From the IMG/VR virus record IMGVR_UViG_3300029984_000001, positions 1 to 64,000 of that record: a stretch of 64,000 nt of DNA. One strand, written 5' to 3'. A program made the translations under genes and the position numbers. Below the pieces are notes generated by a model, which was not told where the DNA came from, ran no database searches, and worked only from the letters and a program-made list of their open reading frames with translations. Below, one piece after another: positions 6,201 through 56,973 of the stretch; the stretch's first letter is position 1, and every line of letters starts with the position of its first letter.

Positions 6201-9014
6201 ACTTATAACTGCTACAGTATCTTGATCTACATTATCTGTACCTGTTGCATAATGAGGAACTTCATTGTTCATATAATTATTTATAACTGTACCTATATCA
6301 CTAGAAAACGTTTCAGCAGCTCTATCTTCACCTCTATTTAATCCCGAAAATTTACCTTTTATTTTAGATGTAATTGGAGAAAATACTGTACCAAAAGCAT
6401 TTTTAGTAGAATCCCATGCTCCAGAGAATACAGATTTGATTCCTCTTCCTATTTCAGAAAATAAACCATCAACTCCATTTTCTTTACTACCAAATAAATA
6501 TTCTTTTACTTTTGCACCTAAATCTTTCAATCCAGTTCTTTCTAGAATATCATTTAGTTTATCTTTTATTCCAAGATCTTTTATTTTATCTGTTAGAGGA
6601 TCTATAACTCTTTCATCTAACCATGTAGAGAATTTATTGAAATTTTCTTTAAGTTTATCAATCATTACTGTTACAAAACTTCTATCATCAGCTTTTTCTC
6701 CAACACCGTAAATTAAACTATATAATTTATTATCTATTTTATCAAATACTCTAGACATTATTTGATTAGGTTTATCAACAATGGATTTAATTTTATCTGT
6801 CATAGTTTTAATTTTATCATAAGATGTACCCGTCTCATCTAGATCATTCATTATCTCATGTATAAAAGACGTCCTATTTTGTAATAATGAGTTTCTTCTA
6901 AACTCTTCTGTTTCCTTTACATTATAAATTTTACCAGCTACACCTCTTTGTAATTTATCAGAATCGTAATCAGTGGTATTAATAAGACCATGATTATCTT
7001 TAGCTTTTCTTTTAGTAACTTCATATGATGCTTCAGATCTTCTTCTAGTTTCTATTTCTCTTAAATCTTCAGTACTAGTTGAATTATTATCTGGAATATT
7101 ATATGTGTCTATATTTGGTGTTGTTAATGAAGTGCCTCTTCTTCTGCCAGTACTACTTGTATTATTACTTCTAATAAATCTTAACTCTCTTAATATTTGA
7201 TCCAAATACCAGAATCCACTATAACCTTTATCACTATTTACATTTAAAGGACTATTTTTATAGGTTAAAGTAGAATTTTTCTTCACATTTCCTTTTTCAT
7301 CTACTCTATAATCATCTTTACCAAATAGATTATTGTCAATAGTATTATAAACACTATTACCTTTATTCTCTATATCTGTAAGATGATTTTTCTGATCTGC
7401 TCTACTTCTCATTATATTTTGAGATAACATTTTCTTTGTATCTTGATTAGAACCTTCAAATAATCCTTTTATAATTTCATAATTATCCGAATCTTGTATA
7501 TTATAATAACTATGATCTAGATTTTTATTATTATATTCAAATAATATACCTTTATCATAAATAGTATTCAACATACTCTTCATATCTTTAAATAAAGATT
7601 CTTGTTCAGAGTAAGTTAGATTTATATACTTAGACATTTCTTTCATTTCATTTTCTATATCTCTTGTAGCTGAATCAGCATAACCTTGTTTTAGATTATC
7701 AAAATTCTTTTTGATTTGATGTTGTTCTACAAAAGTTCCTTTTTCATGATCAAATATCTGAGCAGGCATACCAGATAATAACGAAATTATTTTTGCTAAT
7801 TGTTGTGGTATTACATCATTTAAAGTTTTATCAGAAATTCCATTCCATTTCATTTCACCTCTATGGTATTTAGCAGGAGATAATGATTTTTTTAAACCAG
7901 TATCAGGAGAGAATATTTTTGTTAATTCTCTAATTTTATCAGTGAATGGATTATCTCCTCTATCTTCATCTGTAAACCCATTTAGTTTAGCTGTTAATGA
8001 TCCGAATAGAGATGACGCAGTTTTATCTATCTTCCCCATACTCTTCTTCAAACCGTTACCTATTATGAATTTACTAACAAAACCCTCCATAAGCATACCT
8101 AAAGGATTAGCTGCCAACATCTTTAATACATTTGTATCATCACCCATAGAGTTTAAAGTAGATGTAATTAGACCTAAATCTGGATTGTTCATAACGTTTT
8201 CTTTTACATGTGAAAAATATTCTTTTATATCTGGAATACCACCAATAGCAATATCAGAATAAGATTTCTTTTTCTTAGATTCTTTCTTTTCTGGACCAAT
8301 AATAGTATTCATTTTAGTAGATATTTCTCTTAATAAAGCCGTTTGATCTTGAAGTAACTTGGTAGACTCTTCATAATATTTCTTTTGATTTTCTGCCATA
8401 CTTTTTGTAATATCAACAACAGGCATCATAGAACCTATATTATCATTTATAACTCCAAGATGTTTAGAAAACATTTGATTCGATTTAGTATTTTGCACAT
8501 ATAATAAATTAGTATTTTCTTTTGATACTTGAGTAGAGTATTCTGTTGATCTAACTATTGCTGAACTTATTGCATTAGCATTTGCTTCTGATGATTGATG
8601 AATGTTACTGGATATCATATTATCATTAGAAGGACTAGGAGAATCATTAAAATCTTCATCATCAAAATTAAAATTATCTAACCCTTCAAATTCATCATCA
8701 AAATTCATTCCTGATTGTTCAGCAGATATTTGATCTATTCTTTTAGTATTATAAAAAGTACCATCTCTTAAATCTTCCATAAGAGATTTTTTTAATTGTT
8801 CACCAGCAGTATATACTTGTGATTTTTTAGTATAATCCATCATCCTTTTATATGTTTGTTTATAATTAATAATATCAGAATAGGCTGATCTGAATAAATC
8901 GGCATTAGTCTCTTTAAAATCTTTGACTGAAGACATATTTTCTGATACATGATTAACAGTAGCATATACTATAGATTTTGCAACATTAGTACTATACCCT
9001 AATAAATTAGCCAT
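282..9014 (-). CDS. Giant tail-associated/tape-measure-like protein with C-terminal glucosaminidase/lysozyme-like (approx 1638-2005), NlpC/P60 (approx 1080-1425) and M23 peptidase (approx 636-1004) domains
   Basis: GTPYLWGG..FDCSGFVQY..HVGIYIG (NlpC/P60); HTGIDIG..HYFGHM..STGPHLHYE (M23); YGVDPSLAASIMINETG..NNPAGI..IGSKYAP (glucosaminidase-like); HYATGT..GEAVLP tape-measure-type motif; GGAGG RBS. Confidence 0.85.
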   Translation of the reverse strand: MANLLGYSTNVAKSIVYATVNHVSENMSSVKDFKETNADLFRSAYSDIINYKQTYKRMMDYTKKSQVYTAGEQLKKSLMEDLRDGTFYNTKRIDQISAEQSGMNFDDEFEGLDNFNFDDEDFNDSPSPSNDNMISSNIHQSSEANANAISSAIVRSTEYSTQVSKENTNLLYVQNTKSNQMFSKHLGVINDNIGSMMPVVDITKSMAENQKKYYEESTKLLQDQTALLREISTKMNTIIGPEKKESKKKKSYSDIAIGGIPDIKEYFSHVKENVMNNPDLGLITSTLNSMGDDTNVLKMLAANPLGMLMEGFVSKFIIGNGLKKSMGKIDKTASSLFGSLTAKLNGFTDEDRGDNPFTDKIRELTKIFSPDTGLKKSLSPAKYHRGEMKWNGISDKTLNDVIPQQLAKIISLLSGMPAQIFDHEKGTFVEQHQIKKNFDNLKQGYADSATRDIENEMKEMSKYINLTYSEQESLFKDMKSMLNTIYDKGILFEYNNKNLDHSYYNIQDSDNYEIIKGLFEGSNQDTKKMLSQNIMRSRADQKNHLTDIENKGNSVYNTIDNNLFGKDDYRVDEKGNVKKNSTLTYKNSPLNVNSDKGYSGFWYLDQILRELRFIRSNNTSSTGRRRGTSLTTPNIDTYNIPDNNSTSTEDLREIETRRRSEASYEVTKRKAKDNHGLINTTDYDSDKLQRGVAGKIYNVKETEEFRRNSLLQNRTSFIHEIMNDLDETGTSYDKIKTMTDKIKSIVDKPNQIMSRVFDKIDNKLYSLIYGVGEKADDRSFVTVMIDKLKENFNKFSTWLDERVIDPLTDKIKDLGIKDKLNDILERTGLKDLGAKVKEYLFGSKENGVDGLFSEIGRGIKSVFSGAWDSTKNAFGTVFSPITSKIKGKFSGLNRGEDRAAETFSSDIGTVINNYMNNEVPHYATGTDNVDQDTVAVISRGEAVLPVKEAEQWRNFKKFIKTSVNDVNSDKVSNEDIAKRTHLKMKNMLRGKEQDSDDYNDTMSTMLNMINHDKIKESFSSQEKNNQYAGILKTVLGELKNPSKDGNIFTDYLDQMKGELKNAATKVFSGLTNGNEELTPEKILAEKKKVSNFISEASKGITTYAPEAIGSALLGSGVSLVTGMLGGPLLGAAIGAGISITKHSETMQNWLFGEEFTDENGDKQRKGGFVAKATSSKFVNKMKKLLPDLKNYGIVGGVAGLLPFMPFGPIGGVMLGASFAYAKDTGRMKEWLFGKNNESWLGKKKEKMKSMLPRIGAGALVAAIASPLPFGIMGNAFLGSAIGMATTSEKFQNFIFGKPDGHGKYIGGLLPHFREKIVDPMSAFLKEKRDGAVTWFKKNVFEKLATSVKPFSKQMELMAKGLGKGVLKIFDKIIESSLGVPLSKLVAQIAGPVGKALTWISSKALKGLIGAPIGLINMAGNRLRKRQIKNGTADYMTASERLDFRRKHAMGLGDKTSEFDQLIDGFTQGDSKKLNMMRDSFSNMRTDYKKNKSDRVSMIDDMGGHVSKDVGYFTSKKIMKLIRDGKSDIAFKMIDNINPKHMSDGEKETLKRSLASKVNNYNTSVDKGYKQTESYVDFMDKLKKSGVKIPNSVLNNPEKLSKYIDLLDKEINVNKKKNETKTPEERMEVLQEQESERSETFREKINSKMEEIITTLHDIAHPSPNSNRALSAFDSYNSKEKKKILKDSDNRLYYMNTRGEKEYVTKEEIDANELSYDTKEINKKPNLISMPSKYNLKGNVNKNQRDEDGREYHIDGNNNKIYNKGDIQTQEVERDNKQDKVYKNKMMTFLSRNVEKVRGKAADFISNSTDLKTVGIASTLMKGMLGFAFAPQLIGFAKSTVIPYLKDKVVPFITGTIIPAVVSGIGAVVKEGVLGIGGFILNGFKGFLTQFYNSTLAHLPGLSPIKDSDNNSLKNNSKIYKSNSSDVGSTVSNSIFGESHTDSITGEKYNEIGNGTKAISRYILTGGATGTKALKGFGWLANKSSRIIGKGFDLGKNMLHPLKTIMGTNTASKLGNITRGAGSLVEKSTNFIAKSGGIMNSVYKGIGMDKALSGAMESIKKFLFNLVSNPEIEALVGTERTVKIVEKFIPKFLSGLTQKIAANITKVSARLAGLSTGGVLNIALAIVDFVMGYSNAQTILGITEEPTFLEKVGCGLMKALTGLTIILSFLPDSFLIDLIFDTLLPIFGIDNTDLQQQREKARQEYEDYKKKNNVDISMEDYINKNKGKGKYIVNSMTDTKIDKYQDYINKQDQPTSQNVNPFNKVETVSPGVIDYQNINKNKVIATDSQSSNNNNNNSVSAKYTGNLPWQNVGGANESKKLFNGVGGESTSDGVNAILRGKLSGMGQTYIDLGKKYGVDPSLAASIMINETGGNSPALNNDNNPAGIMDWNNNWKTIKHFDSLNEGLDFAIKNLGDNYIKKGLTTIDQIGSKYAPIGAANDPNGQNKDWVPTVTSLYKKATGDTTPNNPAATGISSSTNSSSSSSNGIAGFFSDLSGAIGNSMNNIFGFNKDANSSSIGNSSSGTTVSGKPGEVIKIAQSFLGTPYLWGGTTPNGFDCSGFVQYVFNKMGIDVGRTTYDQKNAGFHVDQKDIQAGDIVLFKGSSSPPSHVGIYIGDDKYIHAPKTGDVVKISDLSSRNDIYDIRRVLTGSSVGGAVYKGVGGAIENFFSNSLKGNVTSGFGLRDTTGSIPKNHTGIDIGAAKGTSIKSPISGTVVQNKSTKDSNGLGNLLVVKDAIGGEHYFGHMNESSNLKPGDSIKEGQGIGNIGSTGNSTGPHLHYETRQNGVPVNPDTYMRRTFEINNNGIGGENEDNSNITKTQSQSSLKDNPEIGKFLQSVITILTNICVNTTPISDMVKLLSDNGNDNKQTSSNNDIQSKKQNILNKIQKATQSNQDISLSEIMKDMENLALGN

Positions 9015-9887: not shown

Positions 9888-12800
9888 ATGATATTTATAG
9901 ACGAAATAAAATCTCTTAAGTTGTATAATAAACCTTTTTATCTTCCTATTAATCTAAAAGATAAGAAGAGAGGAAGTTCTGTATTTCTTTTAGGTAGAAA
10001 TACCTATCCAGATGGTAGTGGTTATGCTGCTGCTGATATATTATCATCTAATCCATTACTTAATAAAAAATATTTCGAATCTTATTATATAGAAAAAGAT
10101 GTTACTTTCTATATAAATAATGAAGGTTATGTAATGGTTGATAAAATGTCGAAAGTGTTAAATGAAGATAGTTTAGATAAGTTATCAACTGTATTTGGTA
10201 CTGCATCATCATTAAGTATGAGACATTACAAGAATAATGGGACAGATGATGATCCTAATATCGACAAAGACGATAAAGGACAACCAAAATTAAAAGAAGG
10301 CGAAATAAATCCAGATGACACTAAAGACAACAAATTAAAAGCGGATGTATCTAAATCCGAGGACGCTGAACCAACAAATCCAAATAGTACAGATAGTAGT
10401 AATGATAATATAGATACAAATGAAGATGATAAATCTAAATTAAAACAAGATTCAAGAATAAATATATGGGATGAATTAGATAAGGTAGAAGAAAAAGGTG
10501 GAAATAAACATGAATTAATATTTGAATTAACATTCAAAGATTATGATAATAATTATGAATCTCCACGTTCTAGAAATAGTTTATCTAAATATTCTTCTAT
10601 TAAAATACATGATAGTTCCCAATTTAAACATGTTAGAATAGGTAAGAATTATAACGGAAAAGCTTTTTATGATGGAGATGCTTTAGTGGGATATGTAAAT
10701 GTAAATAAAGATAATAATACTATTCAGGCTATGGAAGTGTCTAAAGAGTATCAAGGAACTGGTTTAGGTTCTCAAATATTAAATTTTGCTATAAAAAACC
10801 TCAATGCGACGAATCTTACTGTAAATAAAAAGAATAAAGTTGCTATTAATATGTACAAAAAAAGTGGTTTTGAAAGTTATGATGAGACTGAATATATGTG
10901 GTTTATGAAATTAAATAATAGTAAAGTTGTAAAAGAACAAGTTATGAATGAGTTTTCTAGTTATGAAATGATAAGTGATTTTATGGGTATGATTAAACAA
11001 GCTAAAATAGATGCTTATAATAAAGAATGTCAAGAAAGAGCTTTACAAAATAGATTGATGTTAGAAAATGGAGTTATATCTGAAGGTAATTTTGAGCAAG
11101 AATTAGTTCCAGACGAATTTATAGGTAAAATAGAAGACTCTCTTACTGGTGGTTTCATAGAGTTTGTAAAAGAAGATTGTTCTGTTGTGTTGGGAATTAA
11201 GAGTGAGTTAGAATATATGAATGAAAATATAAATTCTAGTTATAAAAATAAAATTCATAATCTATTATATAATGATAGATTTAAAACTCCTAAAGAAGTT
11301 TTAAATCAGTATGATACTGTAAAAGAAAAAAATTCTGATATAAAATATACTTATTTAAATTATGATAAATATGTTGGAAAAAACTTGTTTATAGATTTAT
11401 CTTTTTATAATGACTCTTTCTATAAAAATAATTCACTTACAAATGACAAAGCTGTAGATTTCTATATTGATTTTATAAAAAGATTAATATTAGATAAAAG
11501 ATTAGATGGTATTTATAATAAGAGAACTATACTTATACCGTTAGACCATGTTATAGAAGATAAGAGAGATTTAATTTATACTCAAAGTATAAATATATTA
11601 TCTTGTATTATAAGAATGATTAATGATAAACATCCTGATGGTTTATGGGATTTTAAAGGTATAGAATTTTTATTATTATCCAATAATGGATATATGAAAT
11701 TTGAACCTGATAAATTGACTAAAGAAGATATTCCTAAATTTGAAAGTCTATTAATAAAATTTGTCAATAAAGAACCGATAGTTGATGATAGTAACATAAA
11801 AGATTCACCGCAAGCTATAGTCGCTAATATATCGGATAAAATTGAAACTTCACAAGGTATTAAGATACATAATCTTACAGGACAAAGTGGAGATAAGAAT
11901 ATAGATGATATAATTAATAAAGTATCAGATGTAGCATCTAAATCTATGTCAGAGGATGAAACTCTGGATAAATTAAATGATAATGATACAGATGATTTCA
12001 AGAATTTAGTTTTAAAAGCAGCTGTAACAAATGGTGAGGTAAAAATCAATGCAAGTAGACAAGCTAGATTAAATAAAGTACATGAAGAATTTATGAATGT
12101 AAAGATAAAGAATAAAACAGTAAAAGAATTATTATCTAAAGAAGATGAGAATAAGGAGTTACCCACTTTATCTTTAAATAATAAAATAGATACAGTAAAT
12201 GAGGAGTGGAATGATTTAAAATTTGTGAATTTCAATACTGTGTATGATATAAATAAAGATATAGTAGATATTCTAAATTCATTATCTACTAAGAAAAATC
12301 CTATTATGGTTAGGGATATACAAATAGAAGATACATCAACTTCTGAAGATATGGTGGAGACATGGACTGTTAAAATGGAAGATGCACATGGTCAAAGATT
12401 TAGTTTCGTATTTGAATTACCTAAATTTAAAGATAAAAGTTCATTATTTCTAAGAGGTAATAAGAAAAAGATCTCTGGACAATATGTATTAATCCCTATA
12501 TCTAAAACAGATGTTTATACAGCTCAAATTGTATCTAATTATAAAAAGATATTTATTAGAAGATTTGGATTGTCTGCTCCAGGAAAATCTTATCCAACTG
12601 CTGATTTGATTTATAAAACTTTATCTAAAAACGAATTTAAAGGATTAAAAATAACTCCAGGAGATAATACTAAAATATCTAATAAGTATGATCTTCCAAT
12701 GGATTATATAGATTTAGCTACTATATATTCTACAATAGAAACACCTAATACTATTATATATTTTAATCAAGATGAAATTAATAAAAAATATAAAGATAAA

Positions 12801-15116
12801 ATAGATAATAATAAAGGTTTACCATTTGCTGTAAATAAATCTAATAATAATATTATATATTGGAATGATAATGTTGTATTATCTGATATGATTTCTACTC
12901 AAATAAGTGTAGATATAAAAGATTATAAAGAATCTTTTGATTTACAAAAAACTAGTACTAAATACCATTATTCACAAGCAAGTATACTAGCATCAAAAAT
13001 TCCATTAATTGTTGTATTAGGTTACAATGAGGGTTTAACAAAAGTATTAGATAAATCAAAGATAGTATATAATATGCAAGAAAAAAGACCTTCTATAAAT
13101 AATACATTTGAAGATTACATAAAGTTTAAAGATGGATATATCGTCTATACCTTAACTTATGATTCTTCATTATTAATGAATGGGTTGAAAGAATGTAATA
13201 CAGAGGACTATTCTTTAACTGAAATAGATAATCCTACGATGTTTTTAGATTTCTTAGATATTTATGGAGGTAGAATATTAGCCGATGGTCTGGATAACTT
13301 TTATGAGTTAATGATAGATGGGATAACAGAAGATGTATTAGAAAGATATAATTTACCGACAGATTATGTTACACTTTGCTTACTAGCAAATAAATTGTTA
13401 GTGGATAATAAGTATATAGCTCATACTAATCCTGAAAGTAATCGTTATAGAAGTAATGAATTACTAGCTGGTTATGCGTATCAATGTATAGCTACGTCTT
13501 ATGGTGATTATAAGACATTTATTAAAAAGGGTAAGACTAAACCTATGACTATGAAGAGAACAGCTATTATAGATGCTATATTATTAGACTCAACTTGTGG
13601 GGATAAATCTGTATTAAATGAAATAATGGATTGGGAAGATGAATGTGCTTTATCTCATAAAGGTCTATCTGGTATGAACAATGATAGATCATATTCTTTA
13701 GATAAGAGAACTTATAATAAAAATATGATTAATCTTGTAGCTATGTCTACTGGATTTGCTGGTAATGTTGGAGTTAATCGTTCTTGTACAATAGATTCTA
13801 ATGTTCAAGGGAAAAGGGGATATCTTAAAATAGATCATAATGAGGATCAGTATTCTATTACCAAGACATTTTGTCCTACAGAAGCATTGACTCCTTATGG
13901 AACTACTTCTGATGATCCTTTTAGATCAGCTATGACATTTATACAAACAGGTTCTCATAGTATGAGAGTTAAAAAAGGTATGCCTAATTTAGTTACTAAT
14001 GGAGCAGACCAAGCGATGCCTTACTTTACATCAAACACATTCTCTTATAATTGTAAAGCTGATGGTGAGGTTGCAGAATTAACAGATTCATATATGGTGT
14101 TGAGATATAAAGATGGTACTCATGAATTTATAAGTTTAGAAGAAAAGGTAGAAAAGAACTCTAATGGTGGTATTTATATTACTATTAAATTAGACCCTTG
14201 TGTTAAACAAGGTCAAAAAATAAAAGCTAAAGATATAGTTGCTTATGATAAATTATCATACTCTAATAAAGTTGGGGATGGACGTAATCCTGCCTACTCT
14301 GGTTATGTAATATGTAAAATGGCTGTAATGAATACTGAGGAAGGTTATGAAGATAGTACAGTCATTTCTGATTGGTTATCAGATGCAATGGCTTCTGATG
14401 TTGTAATAAAGAAAGAAGTTATAATACCTAAAGATTCTAATATTCTTTCTATGGTAAAGAAAGGTCAACCTATTAAAGAAGGAGATTCTTTAATGGTATT
14501 CCAAAATGCATATGATCAAGAGGATGTAAATATATTATTAAAGAATTTATCCGATGATGAGGATGGTATTTCTGAATTAGGAAGAATTCCAATTAAATCT
14601 CATGTTGAAGGAATTGTACAAGATATAAAGATTTCTAGAACAGTAGAAATAGATCAATTATCTGAATCATTACAAAAAATAGTTAAAGCGTATGAAAAAC
14701 CAATTAGAGATAAAAAACAAATATTAAGTAAATATGATATTCCTAATAATGGTTTATTAGATGCCGATTATAAATTAGATAGTACTGGTAAATTGAAGAA
14801 TGTAGATGAAGGTTTATTAATAGAAATATTCTGTAAGTATGAAGATAAGCTATCTACAGGTGATAAGCAGGTGGCATACTCAGCATTAAAAGGAGTAGTT
14901 AAAGGAATGTATCCAAAAGGGATGGAACCTTTCAGTGAATTTAGACCTGATGAGAAAATACATACAATTACCGCTGTGGAAGGAATTTTAGCTCGTATGA
15001 TTGGCAGCCTTGAAAAAGTAGGTAGTATAAATAAAGGTTTAATAGAATTGGATAGATTGGTTAAAGACAAACTAGGAATTAAATGGAAATATCTAGAAGA
15101 GATGATGGAAAACTAA
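9888..15116 (+). CDS. rpoB: Split multisubunit RNA polymerase beta subunit (likely virion RNAP) with a long N-terminal extension containing a GNAT domain
   Basis: FELPKF..LRGNKKKISGQ; ALTPYGTTSDDPFRSAMTFIQ (cf. [20 protein letters not shown]); VMNTEEGYEDS (cf. GYNFEDS); GDK..LKGVV (cf. GDK..NKGVI). Ends before the bacterial beta C-terminal clamp segment, as in phiKZ/AR9-type split RNAPs. Confidence 0.92.
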   Translation: MIFIDEIKSLKLYNKPFYLPINLKDKKRGSSVFLLGRNTYPDGSGYAAADILSSNPLLNKKYFESYYIEKDVTFYINNEGYVMVDKMSKVLNEDSLDKLSTVFGTASSLSMRHYKNNGTDDDPNIDKDDKGQPKLKEGEINPDDTKDNKLKADVSKSEDAEPTNPNSTDSSNDNIDTNEDDKSKLKQDSRINIWDELDKVEEKGGNKHELIFELTFKDYDNNYESPRSRNSLSKYSSIKIHDSSQFKHVRIGKNYNGKAFYDGDALVGYVNVNKDNNTIQAMEVSKEYQGTGLGSQILNFAIKNLNATNLTVNKKNKVAINMYKKSGFESYDETEYMWFMKLNNSKVVKEQVMNEFSSYEMISDFMGMIKQAKIDAYNKECQERALQNRLMLENGVISEGNFEQELVPDEFIGKIEDSLTGGFIEFVKEDCSVVLGIKSELEYMNENINSSYKNKIHNLLYNDRFKTPKEVLNQYDTVKEKNSDIKYTYLNYDKYVGKNLFIDLSFYNDSFYKNNSLTNDKAVDFYIDFIKRLILDKRLDGIYNKRTILIPLDHVIEDKRDLIYTQSINILSCIIRMINDKHPDGLWDFKGIEFLLLSNNGYMKFEPDKLTKEDIPKFESLLIKFVNKEPIVDDSNIKDSPQAIVANISDKIETSQGIKIHNLTGQSGDKNIDDIINKVSDVASKSMSEDETLDKLNDNDTDDFKNLVLKAAVTNGEVKINASRQARLNKVHEEFMNVKIKNKTVKELLSKEDENKELPTLSLNNKIDTVNEEWNDLKFVNFNTVYDINKDIVDILNSLSTKKNPIMVRDIQIEDTSTSEDMVETWTVKMEDAHGQRFSFVFELPKFKDKSSLFLRGNKKKISGQYVLIPISKTDVYTAQIVSNYKKIFIRRFGLSAPGKSYPTADLIYKTLSKNEFKGLKITPGDNTKISNKYDLPMDYIDLATIYSTIETPNTIIYFNQDEINKKYKDKIDNNKGLPFAVNKSNNNIIYWNDNVVLSDMISTQISVDIKDYKESFDLQKTSTKYHYSQASILASKIPLIVVLGYNEGLTKVLDKSKIVYNMQEKRPSINNTFEDYIKFKDGYIVYTLTYDSSLLMNGLKECNTEDYSLTEIDNPTMFLDFLDIYGGRILADGLDNFYELMIDGITEDVLERYNLPTDYVTLCLLANKLLVDNKYIAHTNPESNRYRSNELLAGYAYQCIATSYGDYKTFIKKGKTKPMTMKRTAIIDAILLDSTCGDKSVLNEIMDWEDECALSHKGLSGMNNDRSYSLDKRTYNKNMINLVAMSTGFAGNVGVNRSCTIDSNVQGKRGYLKIDHNEDQYSITKTFCPTEALTPYGTTSDDPFRSAMTFIQTGSHSMRVKKGMPNLVTNGADQAMPYFTSNTFSYNCKADGEVAELTDSYMVLRYKDGTHEFISLEEKVEKNSNGGIYITIKLDPCVKQGQKIKAKDIVAYDKLSYSNKVGDGRNPAYSGYVICKMAVMNTEEGYEDSTVISDWLSDAMASDVVIKKEVIIPKDSNILSMVKKGQPIKEGDSLMVFQNAYDQEDVNILLKNLSDDEDGISELGRIPIKSHVEGIVQDIKISRTVEIDQLSESLQKIVKAYEKPIRDKKQILSKYDIPNNGLLDADYKLDSTGKLKNVDEGLLIEIFCKYEDKLSTGDKQVAYSALKGVVKGMYPKGMEPFSEFRPDEKIHTITAVEGILARMIGSLEKVGSINKGLIELDRLVKDKLGIKWKYLEEMMEN

Positions 15117-28620: not shown

Positions 28621-28637
28621 TTTCCTCTCTTTATTTT
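28608..28637 (+). repeat. 30-bp direct repeat copy 2 (terminator hairpin)
   Basis: Identical to 27581-27610. Confidence 0.9.
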
Positions 28638-29336
28638 TTACATTTAATATAAAATAATTATAGTTATCTGTTTAGAAAATAACAATATAGGTATATACAT
28701 ATCATTTGGTATATGGTTTATATGTTTTCACAGCTATCCCAAATAGGTACTAAAAAGTAGTTGTAACTTTCTATTGTTAGATTCACATAAATGTAAAAGA
28801 TAAAACACAAATAGAAAAGTAAATAGATTAATAAATAAATCATTAGAAAAATATATTATTAGATAATAAAATTCATTATTATAGATACAAATAAATAAGA
28901 AAATCATAAACCACATTTATTAATCAGAATGATTAATAAATAAAATTGAACTTGAATATAGCATAATACAACAGTTCAACTGAAATACAAGCAAAGATAC
29001 TGACTTGGTCTTCAGACCAAGTAAAATGAAGAACGATACTGATATTCCATAGAAAGTTTTAGTATAGATAATAAGAATGAGAAAACAATAACTTATCATA
29101 TTGTATTGGCTTATGACGATTTCAATATAGAAGAATATTTAAATAAAAAGATGAAAACTGAAGGAATAACATCATTTGAGATATCTAGAATAGTATCTAA
29201 CAAAGAACAATAATTATACTATTACGAATAATTGATAAGGGTTTACACTCTTATCTTTTATTTTTTATATATTTAGTATATTATCTATACTTATCAAATA
29301 GATAAGCTGAATAATATATTTATATACATAAGGACA

Positions 29337-29348
29337 AACATTAGATTA
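29337..29348 (+). promoter_or_regulatory. Late-type promoter AACA-N6-TA for nrdD
   Basis: AACAttagatTA upstream of the AAGGGAG RBS. Confidence 0.55.
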
Positions 29349-29379
29349 CAATATATAGAAGAAAAGGGAGATGTGTATT

Positions 29380-30012
29380 ATGAATATTATAAAAAGAGAT
29401 GGAAGAAAAGAAGTAGCAGTATCGCATAAAATAATAAATGCAATGATAATGTCTACTAATGGTCAAAAAGGATATGATCATTATAAATTAACATGTTTGG
29501 GAATGAGTTGTTTAGATGAAATAATAGAAAAGTATGGAAATGATTCTACAATAGAAGTAGACACAATTCATGATGAAGTAATAGATTTTTTAAAGAAAAA
29601 TCATTTATATGAATTAGCAATAAACTATTCTGAATATAGAGATGATAGATCTAAATGTAGGATGAAGAATAGTGAATTAATGAAAATGGTATCAGGTTTA
29701 TCAAAAGAAACTAATCGTGGAAATGCAAATGTGGGTAATAATTTTAGTTCGAAATTATTAATGATTGCATCTGGTGCAAATAAATGTAGTGTACTAGGAG
29801 AAATGCCAAAAGAAATAGCAAGACTTCATGAAGTAGGAGATCTATATTATCACGATTTAGATAGTTTTAACCTTACCACAAATTGTTTACATATACCAGC
29901 AGCTAAGACACTTAGTAAAGGCTTTAACACTGGTTATGGATACATTAAACCTCCCCAAAGGATAGAATCAGCATCAGATTTAATCTGTATACTAATACAA
30001 TCCGTACAGAAT
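29380..30012 (+). CDS. nrdD: Anaerobic ribonucleoside-triphosphate reductase, exon 1 (ATP cone)
   Basis: MNIIKRDGRKE ATP cone; GDLYYHDLD..NCLHIP; ends IQSVQN. Confidence 0.92.
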
Positions 30013-30508
30013 AATTGAATTGTTCCCTCATATGGTAACATATGTTGAATAACCCTGTGAACCTAGATATCTAGGGTGTGTATATAAGTCTAGAGATATA
30101 TGCTAACGGTAGAAGTGAAATAAGATTGATTGCACGACAATTGTAATCCTTTGAGAAATAAGCGAATAAGCTTCGTAAGAGAGCCTGAAGATCCTTTGAT
30201 AACTTCTAAGGATAGCTGGTAATAGCCGTGCTAAATTACATAATTAATATTATGTATAAATGTGAAACGAGTATCTGAAATCTATACACTAAGAGTTGTC
30301 TTAGTTGAAAATAAGGTATTAGAAATAATACACGAAGAAAGTAAGAGTAGGGATAAGTTTAGAGACTTATATGGTATATAATAATTGGTTTTATTATATG
30401 TCACCGAAGTGCAGGGTATCCTATAACAAATACTTATAGGATAATGATATAGTCTAGTCCGATAATTTTAAATTATGTTAAAGTATCACGAAAGTGACGG
30501 TATAATAG
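30013..30508 (+). mobile_element. Group I intron 1 in nrdD (496 nt, no ORF)
   Basis: Splicing joins QSVQN to DQYGGVSIPDLD in frame; exon ends in U with U-G at G30022 (P1 GAAU/GUUC); terminal G30508; ATGATATAGTCT S element; GAAA-capped P9. Confidence 0.9.
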
Positions 30509-31018
30509 GATCAATACGGTGGAGTAAGTATTCCTGATCTAGATAATACGTTAGGATTCTTTGTAAATCTAACAAAAGCAGAAATTCTAGAAGAAATGAA
30601 TGAAGATGAAACAGAAGTAACAAAAGACAAATTAGATAGAAAAGTAAGAAAGAAAACTAGACAAGCTATGCAAGGTATTTGTTATAATCTTAATACAATG
30701 CATTCAAGAGCTGGTTCACAAGTTCCTTTCTCTTCAGTTAATTTAGGATTACCTTTAGATGATGACGCTGCATTAGTGTGTGAGTTATTTTTAGAAGAAT
30801 TTGATAAAGGAATGGGAAAAGGAAGTCCTCTAATTTTTCCTAATGTTGTCTTTACTGTTAAAGATGGTGTAAATAGGAAAGAAGGAGACCCTTATTATTA
30901 TCTATATAAATTAGCATGTAAAGTTGCATCTAAGAAGATGAATCCAACTTTCTTAAATATAGATGCTGATTTTAATTTAGAATATTATAATAAAGGTATT
31001 GTTGCACAAACTATGGGT
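30509..31018 (+). CDS. nrdD: NrdD exon 2
   Basis: DQYGG..NLNTMHSRAGSQVPFSS..IFPN..AQTMG. Confidence 0.92.
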
Positions 31019-31464
31019 TAGGTTACGAGCAGCCCATATAAAACCTCATGAACCTAGAAATCTAGGGTGTATATACGAGTCTAGAAGTATATGCTAACGG
31101 TAGAAGTTGAATAAGATTGGTTATAGAAAAGTGATTATAACCCTACTAGAAATAGTAGTCCATAAACGAAGTAGCTTCGTAAGAGAGCCTAAGGTCCTTT
31201 TTTAATAAGGATAGCTAGGGAATACCGTGTCTGTTAATATAATTTTTATTATAAAAATGAGATGTAACGACTAGTTGAAATCTATATATCAGAGAGAAAT
31301 ACTTTGATTGAAAATAAGGTATAATTAACATTATACACGAAGAAAGTAGACGTAGCAAGAAACTCGGTGAAAGTCCGTAATGCGAAGTATGAGGCTTATT
31401 ATATATGGTAACAGTATATAATAATGAAGAGATAGTCTGTTTAATATTAAAATATTATTAAGCG
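31019..31464 (+). mobile_element. Group I intron 2 in nrdD (446 nt, no ORF)
   Basis: Splicing joins TMG to CRTQVLS; perfect P1 AUGGGU/GCCCAU (G31032); P7 AACGACUA/UAGUCU; terminal G31464. Confidence 0.93.
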
Positions 31465-32433
31465 TGTCGTACTCAAGTATTGTCGAATATAAACGGGTCT
31501 GCTGGACCTACAGGTAGGGGGAATATTGGAAATACAACGATGAATCTACCAAGATTAGGAATCTTATCTAATAATGATATAGATAAATTCTTTGAATTAT
31601 TAACAAATTTATTAGAAGAATGTAAGAATTCCTTACTATATAGAAAAGATGTATTATCAAATCTAAAAGTAAAAGATCTACCATTTATAGCAGGGCAAGA
31701 ATTATTCTTAGGATCTGAAGGATTAAAAGAAACAGATTCTATATTACCTATATTAGAACAAGGAACTTATGGTATGGGATTTGTAGGGTTAGCAGAAACT
31801 CTAGTAGCTTTATTAGGAGTGCATCATGGACAAACATTAGAAGCTAGAGAATTAGGTGAAAAAATAAATGGTTTTATAAGAGAGAAAGCAGATTATTATA
31901 CTACTAAATACTCCTTAAATTTCAGTGCATATGCTTCTCCAGCTGAGGAAGTATCTGGGAAACTTTGTAAAAGTGATATAAAGAAATTTGGTATTATAGA
32001 GGGTGTAAATGATAAAGAATTCTATACAAATGGATTTCATATACCTGTAGATTTCCCTATATCAATTATGAATAAAATACAAATAGAAGCACCTTATCAT
32101 AAAATGTGTAATGGTGGTCATATATCATATATAGAGGTAGATGATTATCCAACTCCAAAATTAGTTGAAAAGGTTGTAACAAAATCATTCACTGAAACTA
32201 ATATAGCTTATATAGGAATCAACTTTCATATAAGATATTGTAAAGAATGTGGAACTCTTTTACATGGAGAATCAAAATGTGATTGTGGGTCTACTAGTAT
32301 TCAAGGTATTTCTAGACTTACAGGATATTTAGGTCTTGATGAAAGATTTGGAGAGACAAAATCAAAAGAAAGATCTTTAAGAATTAATCATAATTCAGAT
32401 CATGCAAAAGTATATAATAATGTAAAGAAATAA
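31465..32433 (+). CDS. nrdD: NrdD exon 3 (spliced product about 703 aa)
   Basis: CRT thiyl Cys, GRGN, GFVGLAE, YTNGFH, GGHISY, CKEC..CDC zinc site, SRLTGYLG glycyl-radical loop. Confidence 0.93.
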   Translation, partial: CRTQVLSNINGSAGPTGRGNIGNTTMNLPRLGILSNNDIDKFFELLTNLLEECKNSLLYRKDVLSNLKVKDLPFIAGQELFLGSEGLKETDSILPILEQGTYGMGFVGLAETLVALLGVHHGQTLEARELGEKINGFIREKADYYTTKYSLNFSAYASPAEEVSGKLCKSDIKKFGIIEGVNDKEFYTNGFHIPVDFPISIMNKIQIEAPYHKMCNGGHISYIEVDDYPTPKLVEKVVTKSFTETNIAYIGINFHIRYCKECGTLLHGESKCDCGSTSIQGISRLTGYLGLDERFGETKSKERSLRINHNSDHAKVYNNVKK

Positions 32434-54507: not shown

Positions 54508-56973
54508 ATGAGTGATATAAAGAAAATTACAAACAGTAATACAATACCATTAGTAGATGAATTGGTTTATTATTCAAAAATTATATGTAGAGATATAGAG
54601 ATAAAAGATCAAACAAGTGCTAATAAATACGAATCATTAGACTCAATCAAAAATTCAGATTTATATATAAAATGTCTAGATTCCAAAGCCAACATATCTA
54701 ATTTTTCATATAGTCGTGATGAATTATTATCATATGGATTAGATTCAATATATATAGATGGTTATTTAGAAAGCCCATTGACTATACCATCGACTATACA
54801 AAAAACAATAATAAACAATAGAACTAATATATATTTAAAATCATATAATGAATTAAATAATTATTATCGAATGCTTAATGGTCTTCCAGATATAGGAGAT
54901 ATAGGTATAACATTGAATGAAAGTTATATAGATACTACTTTATATACTATAAATCTAAATAATAAAATACATGAAATGAGTAAAGATGAACAAGATATTT
55001 TACAAGTATTAGGTATTATTGATATATTAATATTGGAATACCCTAATTCTAAATACCTGAAACATATTGGTTCTAATAAGGTTTCTATATATAAAGCTAG
55101 AAAAGCTTTAGAATTTCAATTGTTATATTTACCTACAGATATCCCAGTAGAAATATCTAAGAGATTTGAATCTAGTTATGAAATAAATAGACAATATACT
55201 ATGAAAAGAGTTTATTCTGATGCATATAAATATAAATCAGATAATTATGATGCCTTTATATCTATATTTATTATTATAACTACTTTATCTGATATATTTG
55301 CTAAAATTCCTGACTTCTTTATAAAAGGAGATATATTTGATTTAAAAACTATAGAATTGATATTTGAATCTAATGGTATAGATTATTTTCCTGATATTCC
55401 AAAGAAGTATCAACTAGCAATGGTACGAAATCTAAATAGATTAAAAAAGTATAGAGCTAGTCATCAGAGTATAGTTGATATTAGTTCTTTATTTGGATTT
55501 GACAATATAGAAGTATTTAAATATTATATATTAAAAGAAAGATTACAAGATTCAGATGGAAATTATACTTTTAATGAAGATGACTCTACGAATTACGATT
55601 TAAAATTTATCAAAGTTCCTATTGATAAAATACCTGATAATTATATAAATCAACCTATTAATCAATTTTCTTATGACGAAATTGTTTCTCAGGATAAATA
55701 TTGGGATGGAGATCAAGACCATGAATATATAAGAAAAAAAATAATCGATTATGAATTTAACATTCTTAGATCTCAGTATATGTCAATAGATAGTGTATAT
55801 TCAATGACTCAATTATCATTTCAAACTACATATTTTTATAATATGCTTTTTGATGATGTATTTATAGAAGATCAATTATTATTAAAAATACCTACAATAA
55901 GTACAATAACATCTTTTAAATTTACCGATATATTAGTATACTTATTTGCTTTAGGTTATATGTATATAGGAGTCACTGATAATATATTATATAAACCAAC
56001 AGAAGTTCTTACTATAAATGGTTTTAATTTTAAAGCTAATTTAGAATTATTGGGAAACTATGTAGCTAATAAAGGTTATACTTTAGAAGAATTAGGAGTA
56101 GCAGATTTTCAAATACCAGATTCATCTATATTGACATATAATCAATTGATGTATATATTCACACAAAATACTAAAGTATATGATCACATATGTAAAGAAA
56201 TGAGAACGGCTGATAATAAAGATATATACGATATTTATAAATCATTATACGATGCATTATTAACAACTGAAGTTAATATGGAATTCTTTAAAAAATCGGA
56301 TGGTACTACTGCAACAGGATATACTGATTTTATAAAAGATAAAAATCCTATTTTATATAAATCTATTCAGGATATAAGAGATATAAAAGATAAAGATGAA
56401 AGGACTTCTAAAATTAGTAATACTATTAATGATATTGTATATATAATAGAATCTTATATGGACTCTGACGATTTTAAATTCTTATGGTATAGAATTCCTA
56501 CAGTATCTTCAGAATCTATAAAAATGTATATGTATGAAGTTATAAATTTCTTTAAATCATATAAGAGTACAATACTTAATATTAATACTATATATAAATT
56601 TGATGATAAATTAGATAACGCTGTTGGTATCATAGATAGAATTAGAATTAATTATGAATTGCATAAAAGTGATATGATTGGAATATTAGATAATATAATT
56701 TTGAATATTTATTTAAATAAAAAAGATAGTATAGATATTAGAGAACAAATATATATTCATGGTTATAATAATAAACCTAGAAATTGTTCAGACCTAATAG
56801 ATATAGTAGATAAAATATCATCAACATATGTTTATCTAAATAAAAAATCAGAAGTTGGTATAAAAGATGTAATAAGAATATATGGTACTTTGACTAAGAG
56901 AACCAATATAGGAATTACTGAAAGATTATTTATAAATGATACTAAGATAGATTTAGAAGAGGAAAACATATAA
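54508..56973 (+). CDS. Putative virion structural protein (baseplate-like), 821 aa
   Basis: CACA-N6-TA late-like site at 54475; NNYYRMLNGLP and LKKYRASHQSIVDISSLFGF recall jumbo-phage structural proteins. Confidence 0.5.
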   Translation: MSDIKKITNSNTIPLVDELVYYSKIICRDIEIKDQTSANKYESLDSIKNSDLYIKCLDSKANISNFSYSRDELLSYGLDSIYIDGYLESPLTIPSTIQKTIINNRTNIYLKSYNELNNYYRMLNGLPDIGDIGITLNESYIDTTLYTINLNNKIHEMSKDEQDILQVLGIIDILILEYPNSKYLKHIGSNKVSIYKARKALEFQLLYLPTDIPVEISKRFESSYEINRQYTMKRVYSDAYKYKSDNYDAFISIFIIITTLSDIFAKIPDFFIKGDIFDLKTIELIFESNGIDYFPDIPKKYQLAMVRNLNRLKKYRASHQSIVDISSLFGFDNIEVFKYYILKERLQDSDGNYTFNEDDSTNYDLKFIKVPIDKIPDNYINQPINQFSYDEIVSQDKYWDGDQDHEYIRKKIIDYEFNILRSQYMSIDSVYSMTQLSFQTTYFYNMLFDDVFIEDQLLLKIPTISTITSFKFTDILVYLFALGYMYIGVTDNILYKPTEVLTINGFNFKANLELLGNYVANKGYTLEELGVADFQIPDSSILTYNQLMYIFTQNTKVYDHICKEMRTADNKDIYDIYKSLYDALLTTEVNMEFFKKSDGTTATGYTDFIKDKNPILYKSIQDIRDIKDKDERTSKISNTINDIVYIIESYMDSDDFKFLWYRIPTVSSESIKMYMYEVINFFKSYKSTILNINTIYKFDDKLDNAVGIIDRIRINYELHKSDMIGILDNIILNIYLNKKDSIDIREQIYIHGYNNKPRNCSDLIDIVDKISSTYVYLNKKSEVGIKDVIRIYGTLTKRTNIGITERLFINDTKIDLEEENI

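What the first reader, a model, noticed from the sequence alone, without database searches (positions are those of the whole stretch)
30013..31464. Two sibling ORF-less group I introns in one nrdD gene
The introns share long blocks (GAACCTAGA.ATCTAGGGTGT, TATGCTAACGGTAGAAGT, GCTTCGTAAGAGAGCCT, TGAAATCTATA, TTGAAAATAAGGTAT, ATACACGAAGAAAGTA) but have different guide sequences matched to their own exons. This suggests one ribozyme re-targeted to a second site, for example by reverse splicing. Intron 2 sits immediately before the catalytic Cys (MG/CRT). Neither encodes an endonuclease, and both have an enlarged P7-P8 region.
Basis: partly seen in the sequence, partly recalled or inferred. Interest (0 to 1): 0.6.

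Follow-up and report, generated by a model that had tools for sequence, protein, structure and literature searches.

The report
Two related introns splitting phage nrdD
The anaerobic ribonucleotide reductase gene of an uncultured jumbo phage is cut into three pieces by two related self-splicing (group I) introns with no genes of their own; this is a known kind of arrangement in phages, though the introns belong to a structurally unusual family that the standard detection model misses.

Summary
Observation confirmed. nrdD (29380-32433, +) is split by inserts at 30013-30508 (I1, 496 nt) and 31019-31464 (I2, 446 nt). The exon pieces abut exactly on the Pfam NRDD profile and in four relatives with uninterrupted genes. 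Both inserts have the group I hallmarks: U.G at the 5' splice site in a site-specific P1, a terminal G, the P3/P7 pseudoknot, P4-P6, P8, and R and S core elements. Neither holds an ORF over 47 aa.

They are true relatives, about 75% identical over about 290 nt, while their ends are no more similar than chance. They are not recent copies. A second jumbo phage (L145) has homologous introns at the same two sites, and the introns do not group by genome. A third phage (L144) has the site-1 intron with an HNH homing endonuclease.

New points:
- The family (over 50 viral loci) has two covarying hairpins between P3 and P4 and scores below Rfam RF00028's threshold.
- The nrdD subfamily has a three-way-junction P7.1.
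- I1 alone has a C-to-G change in its ancestral P7 5' strand and a private patch with a replacement strand.

Reverse splicing is neither supported nor excluded. This is a new variant of a known kind.

The parts
29380..30012 (+). nrdD exon 1 (ATP-cone plus the start of the NRDD domain; ends ...QSVQN)
   Evidence: Pfam ATP-cone and NRDD profile positions 2-100. Homologues start MNIIKRDG/MKIRKRDG.
30013..30508 (+). Intron 1 (I1), ORF-less group I intron, 496 nt, at site 1 (QN|DQ)
   Evidence: Follows U30012 and ends in G30508. All helices verified. MFE z = -2.9. RF00028 partial hit of 23 bits, E = 0.003. Empty-site alleles.
30022..30025 (+). I1 guide sequence GUUC; pairs with exon GAAU 30009-30012 (P1, with U.G at the splice site)
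   Evidence: The same AAUUGUUCC is found in the site-1 introns of L144 and L145.
30029..30044 (+). I1 P2 hairpin (CAUAUG-GUAA-CAUAUG)
   Evidence: P2 with a GNRA-type loop is shared by the site-1 introns. I2 has no equivalent.
30052..30059 (+). I1 P3 5' strand ACCCUGUG; pairs with 30410-30417 UGCAGGGU
   Evidence: recovered by the unconstrained MFE.
30062..30103 (+). I1 extra hairpins H1 (30062-30075) and H2 (30080-30103), inserted between P3 and P4
   Evidence: a covarying feature of the family. Absent from the P100 and L137 introns.
30106..30229 (+). I1 P4 (30106-30110 / 30225-30229) enclosing P5, P5a and a three-way-junction hairpin (GUAAGAGAGCC ... AAGGAUAGC)
   Evidence: The same junction is in the Listeria phage P100 RNR intron.
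30237..30256 (+). I1 P6 hairpin; its L144 homologue carries the HNH ORF in this loop
30262..30274 (+). I1 relic of the ancestral J6/7-P7 5' strand, R(a): GUGAAACGAGUAU; a C-to-G change gives a G.G clash in the middle of P7
   Evidence: Canonical ACGACUA at the homologous place in I2, L144_i1, L145_i1 and L145_i2. One mismatch. Duplex -3.8 against -7.0 kcal/mol.
30281..30338 (+). I1 elaborated P7.1: closing stem UCU 30281-30283 / AGA 30336-30338, arm hpA 30289-30304, arm hpB 30316-30331 (GAAA loop)
   Evidence: RNAalifold compensatory pairs. In IMG/VR the module is found only in this phage, and elsewhere only in the L144, L145 and L142 nrdD introns.
30354..30417 (+). I1 private patch: replacement P7 5' strand R(b) (UUUAGAGACUUAU, AGACU 30363-30367), 9-bp hairpin 30376-30399, CGAAGUG, P3 3' strand 30410-30417
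   Evidence: No counterpart in I2, L144_i1 or L145_i1, which have the conserved P7.2 motif GGUGAAAGUCC here.
30418..30455 (+). I1 P8 (30418-30442), J8/7 and P7 3' strand (AAUGAUAUAGUCU, 30443-30455)
30459..30508 (+). I1 3' tail: P9 junction (CCG/CGG), P9, P9.1 (UCAC-GAAA-GUGA), terminal G30508
   Evidence: 83-89% identical to the tails of Enterococcus and Staphylococcus phage introns and of L144_i1. The exact 27-mer is in 17 metagenome loci with diverse group I cores.
30509..31018 (+). nrdD exon 2 (DQYGG ... AQTMG)
   Evidence: Pfam NRDD profile positions 101-263.
31019..31464 (+). Intron 2 (I2), ORF-less group I intron, 446 nt, at site 2 (MG|CR, directly before the thiyl-radical Cys codon)
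   Evidence: Follows U31018 and ends in G31464. Helices verified. MFE z = -2.5. RF00028 partial hit of 17 bits.
31032..31037 (+). I2 guide sequence GCCCAU; pairs with exon AUGGGU 31013-31018 (P1, 6 bp including U.G)
31044..31050 (+). I2 P3 5' strand CCUCAUG; pairs with 31388-31394 UAUGAGG
31053..31094 (+). I2 H1 (31053-31066) and H2 (31069-31094), between P3 and P4
31097..31228 (+). I2 P4 (31097-31101 / 31224-31228) with the P5 extension and junction hairpin
31238..31253 (+). I2 P6
31264..31274 (+). I2 functional J6/7-P7 5' strand GUAACGACUAG (GACUA 31269-31273 pairs with UAGUC 31433-31437)
31281..31343 (+). I2 elaborated P7.1 three-way junction (stem UCU/AGA, hpA 31288-31308, hpB 31319-31336)
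31365..31377 (+). I2 P7.2 (CGG-UGAAAGU-CCG, the conserved GGUGAAAGUCC motif)
31396..31464 (+). I2 P8 (31396-31424), J8/7-P7 3' strand (GAAGAGAUAGUC), short P9 (31442-31457), terminal G31464
   Evidence: The tail is shared with L145_i2 and is unrelated to the I1 tail.
31465..32433 (+). nrdD exon 3 (starts CRTQV; contains the Cys-rich zinc site and the glycyl-radical motif ...RLTGYLG; stop at 32431-32433)
   Evidence: Pfam NRDD profile positions 264-562. Aligns with the P. copri and T4 NrdD structures. Cys1 corresponds to T4 Cys290.

Best explanation
Both inserts are self-splicing group I introns of one phage-borne family, closest to the IA2 type of Twort, T4 td and the Listeria phage P100 RNR intron.

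How each should splice: the guide sequence pairs with the last 4-6 exon bases to form P1, with a U.G wobble at the splice site. P3 and P7 form the core pseudoknot around P4-P6 and P8. The terminal G docks for exon ligation, which restores ...QN|DQ... and ...MG|CR... and yields an intact 706-residue NrdD.

Relationship: the two are old paralogues. They share everything from P3 to P7.1, including a three-way-junction P7.1 seen only in nrdD introns of this phage group. They have site-specific P1/P2 regions and 3' tails, and the same pair sits at the same two sites in another jumbo phage (L145).

I1: it is the ORF-less form of an intron that carries an HNH homing endonuclease in P6 in a related phage (L144), so spread at site 1 is probably endonuclease-driven homing.

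I1's core repair: in I1 only, the ancestral P7 5' strand has a C-to-G change that breaks the central P7 pair. A private patch of about 65 nt supplies a second, consensus-like P7 5' strand, a new hairpin and the P3 3' strand. I infer that I1 now builds P7 with this replacement.

Shown here: the boundaries, the helices and their covariation, the homology, the distribution and the endonuclease. Inferred: splicing itself, which P7 strand I1 uses, and the mode of spread.
For: - Exact exon junctions.
- U before and G at the end of both inserts, and all helices complementary.
- Unconstrained folds recover P2, P3, H1, H2, P5a, P6, hpA, hpB, P8 and P9, with z = -2.9 and -2.5.
- Partial RF00028 matches on P8/J8-7/P7/P9.
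- P3 is compensated in at least 10 different sequence versions across the family. H1 and H2 have many distinct complementary stems. 20 of 56 consensus pairs show double compensatory changes among four nrdD introns.
- P5 junction shared with the P100 RNR intron. H1/H2 plus an HNH ORF in Clostridium phage CS266P3.
- I1's tail is shared with Staphylococcus and Enterococcus phage introns and with 17 metagenome introns, including textbook cores.
- L145 has both introns and L144 has the site-1 intron with an HNH ORF (PHROG 2081, E = 6e-52).
- Tree: I1 groups with L144_i1 (90/83), with no grouping by genome.
- R(a) is canonical in four homologues and mutated in I1. P7 duplex -7.0 (R(b)) against -3.8 kcal/mol (R(a)).
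- The gene is otherwise intact, with Cys290 equivalent, zinc site and glycyl-radical motif.
Against: - No RNA data, so splicing is not shown.
- RF00028 reaches only 23 and 17 bits against a gathering score of 50. The same model also misses P100, CS266P3, the Staphylococcus terminase intron and the compact L137 intron.
- P1 of I1 is only 4 bp.
- Hairpins between P3 and P4 are not part of the canonical group I scheme, and their spatial fit is untested.
- In I1 the R(b) bases can alternatively be absorbed into a long local hairpin (MFE), so R(a) with a mismatch cannot be excluded.
- The by-site grouping in the tree is weak (54/42).
Confidence: 0.82

Rival explanations
1. Recent retargeting inside this genome. 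One intron was copied to the second site of the same gene by reverse splicing into nrdD RNA, reverse transcription and recombination, and its guide sequence then adapted.
For: The two introns are homologous over about 290 nt and have different guide sequences. Sibling introns multiplying within one gene recur in this family: three mutually closest introns lie in a phage recA gene (L001). Two Twort orf142 introns are described as highly similar (PMC10136302).
Against: The pair pre-dates this genome. L145 has both at the same sites, and the introns do not group by genome. Core identity is only about 75%. P1/P2 and the 3' tails are unrelated between sites but conserved within a site, which a whole-intron copy does not predict. 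GUUC and GCCCAU target unrelated exon sequences. No reverse transcriptase is seen in the window, and there is no direct experimental support for this pathway in general (PMC3984707).
Confidence: 0.1
2. Core transfer between unrelated resident introns. Each site was first colonised by a different intron, and recombination at conserved core sequences later copied the P3-to-P7.1 interior from one into the other. This is domain shuffling of the kind reported for T4 introns (from memory: Bryk and Belfort 1990).
For: Similarity stops abruptly at structural boundaries, just inside the P3 5' strand and after P7.1, while the ends are at chance level. Site 2 is occupied by a completely different compact intron in L137, so resident introns of other kinds exist there. 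I1 itself shows one clear module replacement. The L142 contig joins an I1-type 5' half to an I2-type 3' half within the shared block.
Against: L145_i1, a site-1 intron, is similar to I2 over I2 positions 33-420, which includes P7.2, P3', P8 and the P7 3' strand. So the homology covers nearly the whole ribozyme, not only an interior patch. The resemblance between the 5' ends of I2 and the L137 intron is explained by the shared target and an A-rich joiner. L142 may be an assembly chimera.
Confidence: 0.2
3. I1 still uses its ancestral P7 5' strand R(a) despite the G.G clash, or splices poorly, and the R(b)-like sequence is only part of a replaced P7.2 hairpin.
For: R(a) keeps 5 of 6 pairs. The MFE fold sequesters the R(b) bases in a long hairpin. 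R(a) lies at the position used by all four homologues.
Against: R(b) matches the family consensus UAGAGACUAAU closely and gives a better duplex, -7.0 against -3.8 kcal/mol. It is followed by the hairpin-CGAAGUG-P3' arrangement typical of the family. The only change in R(a) hits the central pair of P7.
Confidence: 0.3
4. The inserts are not functional introns. On this reading nrdD is a decaying pseudogene interrupted by dead mobile-element remnants.
For: No RNA evidence. Sub-threshold Rfam scores. A relative's contig lacks exon 2.
Against: All three exons keep an open frame, conserved catalytic residues and exact junctions. Helices are maintained by compensatory changes across phages whose NrdD is 55-70% identical. 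The arrangement is conserved in L145.
Confidence: 0.03

Closest known systems
Phage T4 nrdD (sunY) group I intron with I-TevII
   Same: A group I intron of the phage IA type in the same gene, the class III RNR large subunit.
   Different: A single intron at another site: T4's lies upstream of the residue matching exon-2 position 61. It encodes a GIY-YIG endonuclease. No sequence similarity was detected.
Staphylococcus phage Twort orf142 introns 2 and 3, and the two Twort nrdE introns
   Same: Several group I introns in one phage gene. Two of the orf142 introns are described as highly similar IA2 introns (PMC10136302). Twort nrdE has two introns in an RNR gene (listed in PMC3984707). P2 with a GUAA loop and the P4/P6/J6-7/P7 sequences resemble Twort's (from memory of the Twort ribozyme sequence).
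   Different: Here the exon between the introns is 510 nt, not 23 nt. The siblings are about 75% identical, with unrelated ends. The extra helices H1/H2 and the three-way-junction P7.1 are present. Nothing is known about exon skipping.
Listeria phage P100 RNR large-subunit intron (unannotated gap between gp55 and gp56)
   Same: The same P5 three-way junction (GUAAGAGAGCCUAAG ... GGAUAG ... AAUCCCGUGC), R element and S element, in an RNR gene.
   Different: Canonical P3-UAA-P4 without H1/H2. Small, about 250 nt or more. Simple P7.1/P7.2.
Clostridium phage CS266P3 intron with an I-HmuI-like HNH ORF
   Same: The same family: GUGAAC-H1-GGUGU-H2-GCUAACGG, the P5 junction, R GUGUAACGACUAG, GAAGUG before P3', and P3 CGCUUG/CAAGCG. 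It comes from a cultured Clostridium-group phage.
   Different: It carries a homing endonuclease in P6, lacks the three-way-junction P7.1, and sits in a different host gene.
Collaborative homing of ORF-less phage introns with free-standing endonucleases
   Same: ORF-less introns in conserved phage genes that can still spread (PMC3984707).
   Different: No relative of the L144 HNH endonuclease is found in the 64 kb window. The other 200 kb of the phage were not examined.

Membership tests
Group I self-splicing intron | The 5' splice site follows a U that forms a U.G wobble with the internal guide sequence in P1 | tested here: met
   I1 GAAU/GUUC (4 bp) and I2 AUGGGU/GCCCAU (6 bp), each with a terminal U.G.
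Group I self-splicing intron | The intron ends in G (omega G), and exon ligation restores the reading frame | tested here: met
   G30508 and G31464. The junctions reproduce uninterrupted homologues.
Group I self-splicing intron | Core helices in the order P3-P4-P5-P6-P7-P3'-P8-P7', with the P3/P7 pseudoknot | tested here: met
   All helices are complementary. P3 covaries in at least 10 versions. P4, P5a, P8 and others are compensated. Departure from the scheme: two hairpins lie between P3 and P4.
Group I self-splicing intron | Conserved core sequence elements P, Q, R (J6/7-P7) and S (J8/7-P7') | tested here: met
   GCUAACGGUA, AAUA(G)CCGUG, GUAACGACUAG or UAGAGACUUAU, and GAUAUAGUC or GAGAUAGUC.
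Group I self-splicing intron | Match to Rfam RF00028 at the gathering score (50 bits) | tested here: not met
   0 hits at gathering; 23.1 and 17.4 bits on the 3' parts only. The model also misses the homologous or canonical introns of P100, CS266P3, PMBT8, S2G3, L137, L144 and L145, so this is a sensitivity limit of the model for AT-rich phage introns.
Group I self-splicing intron | Guanosine-dependent self-splicing | not testable with these tools
   Needs in vitro transcription and splicing, or RNA data.
Subgroup IA2 (phage type) | P7.1 and P7.2 inserted between the P7 5' strand and the P3 3' strand | tested here: met
   I2: three-way-junction P7.1 plus P7.2 with the GGUGAAAGUCC motif. I1: hairpin(s) after R(b).
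Subgroup IA2 (phage type) | P3 joined to P4 by a short J3/4, as in td, Twort, P100 and the L137 intron | tested here: not met
   About 45 nt with two covarying hairpins lie between P3 and the UAA-P4. P100 and L137 have the short joiner.
Subgroup IA2 (phage type) | Assignment by subgroup-specific covariance models (GISSD) | not tested
Mobile intron with a homing endonuclease | Endonuclease ORF inside the intron | tested here: not met
   Longest ORFs are 40 aa (I1) and 47 aa (I2). The L144 homologue of I1 has a 229-aa HNH ORF in P6.

The most novel reading that the evidence does not exclude
The family may be an undescribed structural subclass of group I introns. A covarying two-hairpin module replaces the short J3/4 linker between P3 and P4. 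The family is widespread in phages of Clostridia-type hosts and is invisible to RF00028.

Within it, I1 would be a natural case of ribozyme core repair: a mutated P7 5' strand functionally replaced by a captured second copy.

The site-1 and site-2 paralogues, present with and without an HNH endonuclease in related jumbo phages, would then be a tractable natural system for testing how a group I intron reaches a new site.
Probability: 0.3. Interest if true: 0.6.

Novelty: new variant of a known kind. Interest (0 to 1): 0.42.

Why it matters
Phage ribonucleotide reductase genes are classic intron targets, so two introns in nrdD are not surprising in themselves. The case adds three things.

1. A documented blind spot. 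A family with more than 50 viral loci, including cultured Clostridium-group phages, falls below the standard group I model. Such genes are therefore annotated as fragments: about 60 exon-1-sized NrdD "proteins" are in the public protein collection.

2. A structural variation at a place normally considered fixed, the P3-P4 joiner that makes base triples in the core, plus a three-way-junction P7.1.

3. A set of related phages carrying zero, one or two of these paralogous introns, one of them with a homing endonuclease. They also include a different intron at the same catalytic-Cys site and a possible intron-intron recombinant. This is useful material for testing ectopic intron movement, for which direct evidence is still lacking.

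Tried and rejected
1. Mosaic reading. My first reading after searches was that the shared block was an interior patch copied between unrelated introns and that I1 was a two-part chimera. I weakened this once L144 and L145 were fetched: L145_i1 matches I2 across nearly the whole ribozyme. It is kept only as a rival.

2. Tandem R units. The idea that I2 also carries tandem R units was rejected. Its 'R(b)-like' stretch lies upstream of the conserved P7.2 motif GGUGAAAGUCC, and the hpA/hpB module is a three-way-junction P7.1.

3. Rfam. The gathering threshold gave nothing on the window or on relatives.

4. Viral-contig scans for the P7.1 module found only this phage.

5. 5'-end resemblance. The similarity between the 5' ends of I2 and the L137 site-2 intron (CAGCYCAURUAAAACCU) was judged explainable by the identical target and an A-rich joiner, so it was not used.

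6. Population variants. Seven contigs of the same phage were searched for informative intron polymorphisms, but all are 100% identical.

7. Closer relatives of I1. P0002 and P0003 have contigs that end inside the shared block, so the R(a)/R(b) state of the nearest relatives is unknown. The metagenome scan with the 3' tail recovered only the same phage and L144 among nrdD introns.

8. No relative of the L144 HNH endonuclease is found in the window.

9. Literature. Searches for helices between P3 and P4 ('P3.1/P3.2', 'between P3 and P4') found nothing relevant. The Twort papers PMC113830 and PMC22036 are not held.

10. The global-alignment '80% identity' for the 3' parts is an artefact of 63 gap columns and was disregarded.
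Full report
**What is there**

The window is the first 64 kb of a 263.6 kb viral contig, IMGVR_UViG_3300029984_000001. It is about 25% G+C. On the + strand, an anaerobic ribonucleotide reductase gene (nrdD) is split into three open pieces: 29380-30012, 30509-31018 and 31465-32433.

The three translations hit the Pfam NRDD profile at positions 2-100, 101-263 and 264-562, so they fit together with no residue missing or repeated. Four related viral contigs (L133-L136, NrdD 44-57% identical) have an uninterrupted gene in which the pieces abut to the codon at both places.

Seven contigs of the same phage from independent assemblies are 100% identical over the whole 3,054 nt gene, so the layout is not an assembly artefact. 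Neither insert has an ORF longer than 47 aa.

Exon 3 begins with the Cys of CRTQV. By position this is Cys290 of T4 NrdD, which from my own knowledge of the T4 enzyme is the thiyl-radical cysteine on the finger loop. Exon 3 also keeps the zinc-site cysteines and the glycyl-radical motif.

**Are they group I introns?**

Rfam's RF00028 gives no hit at its gathering score. It gives only partial matches of 23 and 17 bits over P8, J8/7, P7' and P9. The same model also misses the following:

- the compact, textbook-looking intron of L137;
- the Listeria phage P100 RNR intron;
- the Staphylococcus terminase intron;
- the Clostridium phage CS266P3 intron.

The failure therefore reflects the model and says little about these inserts.

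Direct analysis gives a complete group I scheme for both, and every helix was checked base by base:

- a U before the 5' splice site, paired as U.G with a guide sequence (I1 GAAU/GUUC, I2 AUGGGU/GCCCAU);
- a terminal G;
- a long-range P3 (I1 ACCCUGUG/UGCAGGGU, I2 CCUCAUG/UAUGAGG);
- P4 with a P5 extension, then P6;
- the R element (J6/7 and the P7 5' strand);
- P7.1 and P7.2, then P8;
- the S element (GAUAUAGUC or GAGAUAGUC), then P9.

Unconstrained folding recovers most of these, including the 350 nt-range P3, with z-scores of -2.9 and -2.5.

**The family**

Short conserved blocks led to more than 50 viral loci, four bacterial genome or MAG contigs (Oscillospiraceae, Lachnospiraceae, Clostridiales, Niallia) and several deposited phages with related elements. 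Across 17 compact members plus the nrdD introns:

- The P3 5' strand lies directly upstream of a conserved UGAAC. It is perfectly complemented just before P8 in at least ten different sequence versions.
- Between P3 and the UAA-P4 there are two hairpins, H1 and H2, each with many distinct complementary stems.

The P100 RNR intron and the L137 intron, which share the P5 junction or the td/Twort-like core, lack these hairpins and have the usual short joiner. Clostridium phage CS266P3 has them, together with an I-HmuI-like HNH ORF in P6.

My limited literature search found no description of helices at this position. A 2025 survey notes that phage 'IA2' is heterogeneous and probably extends beyond the current subgroups (PMC11878797).

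**How I1 and I2 are related**

| Comparison | Result |
|---|---|
| Interior, H1 to P6 | local score 152 vs shuffle mean 20; 0 of 300 shuffles reach it |
| Interior, R(a) plus P7.1 | local score 67 vs shuffle mean 18; 0 of 300 |
| Shared core overall | 74.7% identity over 281 aligned columns |
| 5' ends | 52 of 300 shuffles reach the score |
| 3' parts | 28 of 300 shuffles reach the score |

I1's tail (P9 junction, P9, P9.1) is 83-89% identical to the tails of introns in Enterococcus and Staphylococcus phages. Its 27 nt core occurs exactly in 17 metagenome loci attached to very different group I cores. I2 has a short, unrelated tail.

This first suggested a mosaic, so I looked for other nrdD genes interrupted at site 1. 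I searched with exon 1 alone, which finds exon-1-sized fragments. There are about 60 such fragments. The fetched loci changed the picture:

- **L145**, a 218 kb contig with NrdD 55-62% identical, has the same three-exon layout, with homologous introns of 486 and 448 nt at the same two sites.
- **L144** has a 1,191 nt intron at site 1 only. It is homologous to I1 from end to end and has a 229-aa HNH endonuclease ORF in P6 (PHROG 2081, E = 6e-52).
- **L145's site-1 intron** matches I2 over I2 positions 33-420, so the homology covers nearly the whole ribozyme.

Site-specific parts are conserved within a site: the AAUUGUUCC guide, P2 and the long tail at site 1; the CCUCAU P3 and the short tail at site 2.

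A tree of the core groups I1 with L144_i1 (90/83). It is compatible with grouping by site (weak, 54/42) and shows no grouping by genome.

So I1 and I2 are genuine but old paralogues that have not been homogenised by gene conversion. The nrdD introns share a derived feature found nowhere else in the collections searched: an elaborated P7.1. In it, two arms (hpA and hpB, both compensated between introns) are closed by a short stem that switches U-A to G-C in the L145 pair.

**A peculiarity of I1**

At the position where I2, L144_i1, L145_i1 and L145_i2 all have a canonical ACGACUA, I1 has ACGAGUA. The C-to-G change puts a G.G clash in the middle of P7.

Downstream, the other nrdD introns have the widely conserved P7.2 motif GGUGAAAGUCC. 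I1 instead has a private stretch (about 30354-30417) containing:

- UUUAGAGACUUAU, a close match to the other R variant of the family;
- a 9-bp hairpin;
- CGAAGUG;
- the P3 3' strand.

The predicted P7 duplex is -7.0 kcal/mol with this second strand against -3.8 with the damaged one. For I2 the ancestral strand is preferred, at -5.9 against -3.8.

I infer with about 70% confidence that I1 now uses the replacement strand and the old one is a relic. The MFE fold can also bury the replacement in a long hairpin, so this needs an experiment.

**Mechanism of spread**

Nothing here tests reverse splicing. Three points argue against a simple version of it:

- The guide sequences target unrelated exon sequences.
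- The ends differ by site.
- A DNA-level agent, the HNH endonuclease, exists in a close relative.

In its favour as a general tendency, sibling introns multiply within genes in this family. A phage recA gene (L001) is broken by at least four introns, three of which are each other's closest relatives (97/99).

Site 2 is a shared target: L137 has a quite different compact intron at exactly ATGGGT|TGT. T4's own nrdD intron is at another site.

**Comparison with what is known, and verdict**

The following are all documented:

- multiple group I introns in one phage gene;
- similar siblings: Twort orf142 introns 2 and 3, which can skip the short exon between them (PMC10136302);
- two introns in an RNR gene: Twort nrdE (reference list of PMC3984707);
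- introns at codons for catalytic residues;
- ORF-less introns.

The finding is therefore a new instance of a known phenomenon. The structural features (H1/H2 between P3 and P4, the three-way-junction P7.1, the replaced P7 strand) and the invisibility to RF00028 make it a new variant, not a routine member. Interest is moderate.

Noticed in passing
L142 2593-3043 (ENA ERZ27250147 k141_1357480) and L143 2673-2887 (JGI 3300030838): In the closest relative (NrdD 77% identical), exon 1 is followed by a 451 nt hybrid intron and then directly by exon 3, with exon 2 absent. The hybrid is I1-type up to about position 195 and I2-type after that. Its P3 strands (ACCCUG and AUGAGG) do not match. It is either an assembly jump across the shared block or a real intron-intron deletion recombinant. 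L143 and three contigs of another relative (L147-L149) all end inside the shared block.
   Followed up: partly
L137 2900-4049 and 4361-4669 (IMGVR_UViG_3300045988_100350): A related jumbo phage has no intron at site 1. It has a different, compact td/Twort-like intron (309 nt) at exactly site 2, and a third intron of about 1.1 kb after ...MHSRAG|SQVPF with an endonuclease ORF (PHROG 4645; weak LAGLIDADG_3 hit). RF00028 detects neither.
   Followed up: partly
L146 4148-6819 (GCA_902143515.1, 1.1 Mb bacterial contig): A bacterial nrdD carries a group II intron (starts GUGCGAC; 603-aa ORF with RVT_1 and HNH domains) inserted after ...QNDMFGG, 5 codons downstream of site 1. This short stretch of nrdD is a target for both intron classes.
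   Followed up: partly
L001 4500-8200 (IMGVR_UViG_3300043080_000589; the same gene in L010): A phage recA gene is broken into many small exons (RecA profile 1-48, 49-89 and 206-245 on separate ORFs) by at least four introns. One is an RF00028-detected intron. Three are mutually closest members of the H1/H2 family.
   Followed up: partly
L129 2423-2680 (Listeria phage P100, NC_007610 about 55028-55290): The RNR large-subunit gene of P100 is annotated as two separate CDSs (gp55 and gp56). A small group I intron sits between them, is not annotated, and is not detected by RF00028 at gathering.
   Followed up: partly
L157-L173 (metagenome scan): The exact 27-mer GTTAAAGTATCACGAAAGTGACGGTAT (P9.1 region) ends group I introns with otherwise very different cores, including ones with canonical AAUUGCGGGAAA/AAUCCGCA P4 strands. 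It looks like a freely exchanged 3' module.
   Followed up: partly
protein list: About 60 clusters of 205-230-aa 'NrdD' proteins in the public collection cover exactly exon 1. Many lie on long contigs, mostly from Clostridia-like sources. Of the four sampled, three were interrupted at site 1 and one 5 codons downstream, so interruption near site 1 appears widespread and is being annotated as truncated proteins.
   Followed up: partly
window 28621-29370: A 750 nt very AT-rich stretch upstream of nrdD has no ORF of 60 aa or more on the + strand and only short ORFs. It is unusually long for this densely packed genome.
   Followed up: no
window 282-9014 (-) and 9888-15116 (+): Two divergently oriented giant ORFs of 2,910 and 1,742 aa, with the GC-skew sign switching between them.
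   Followed up: no
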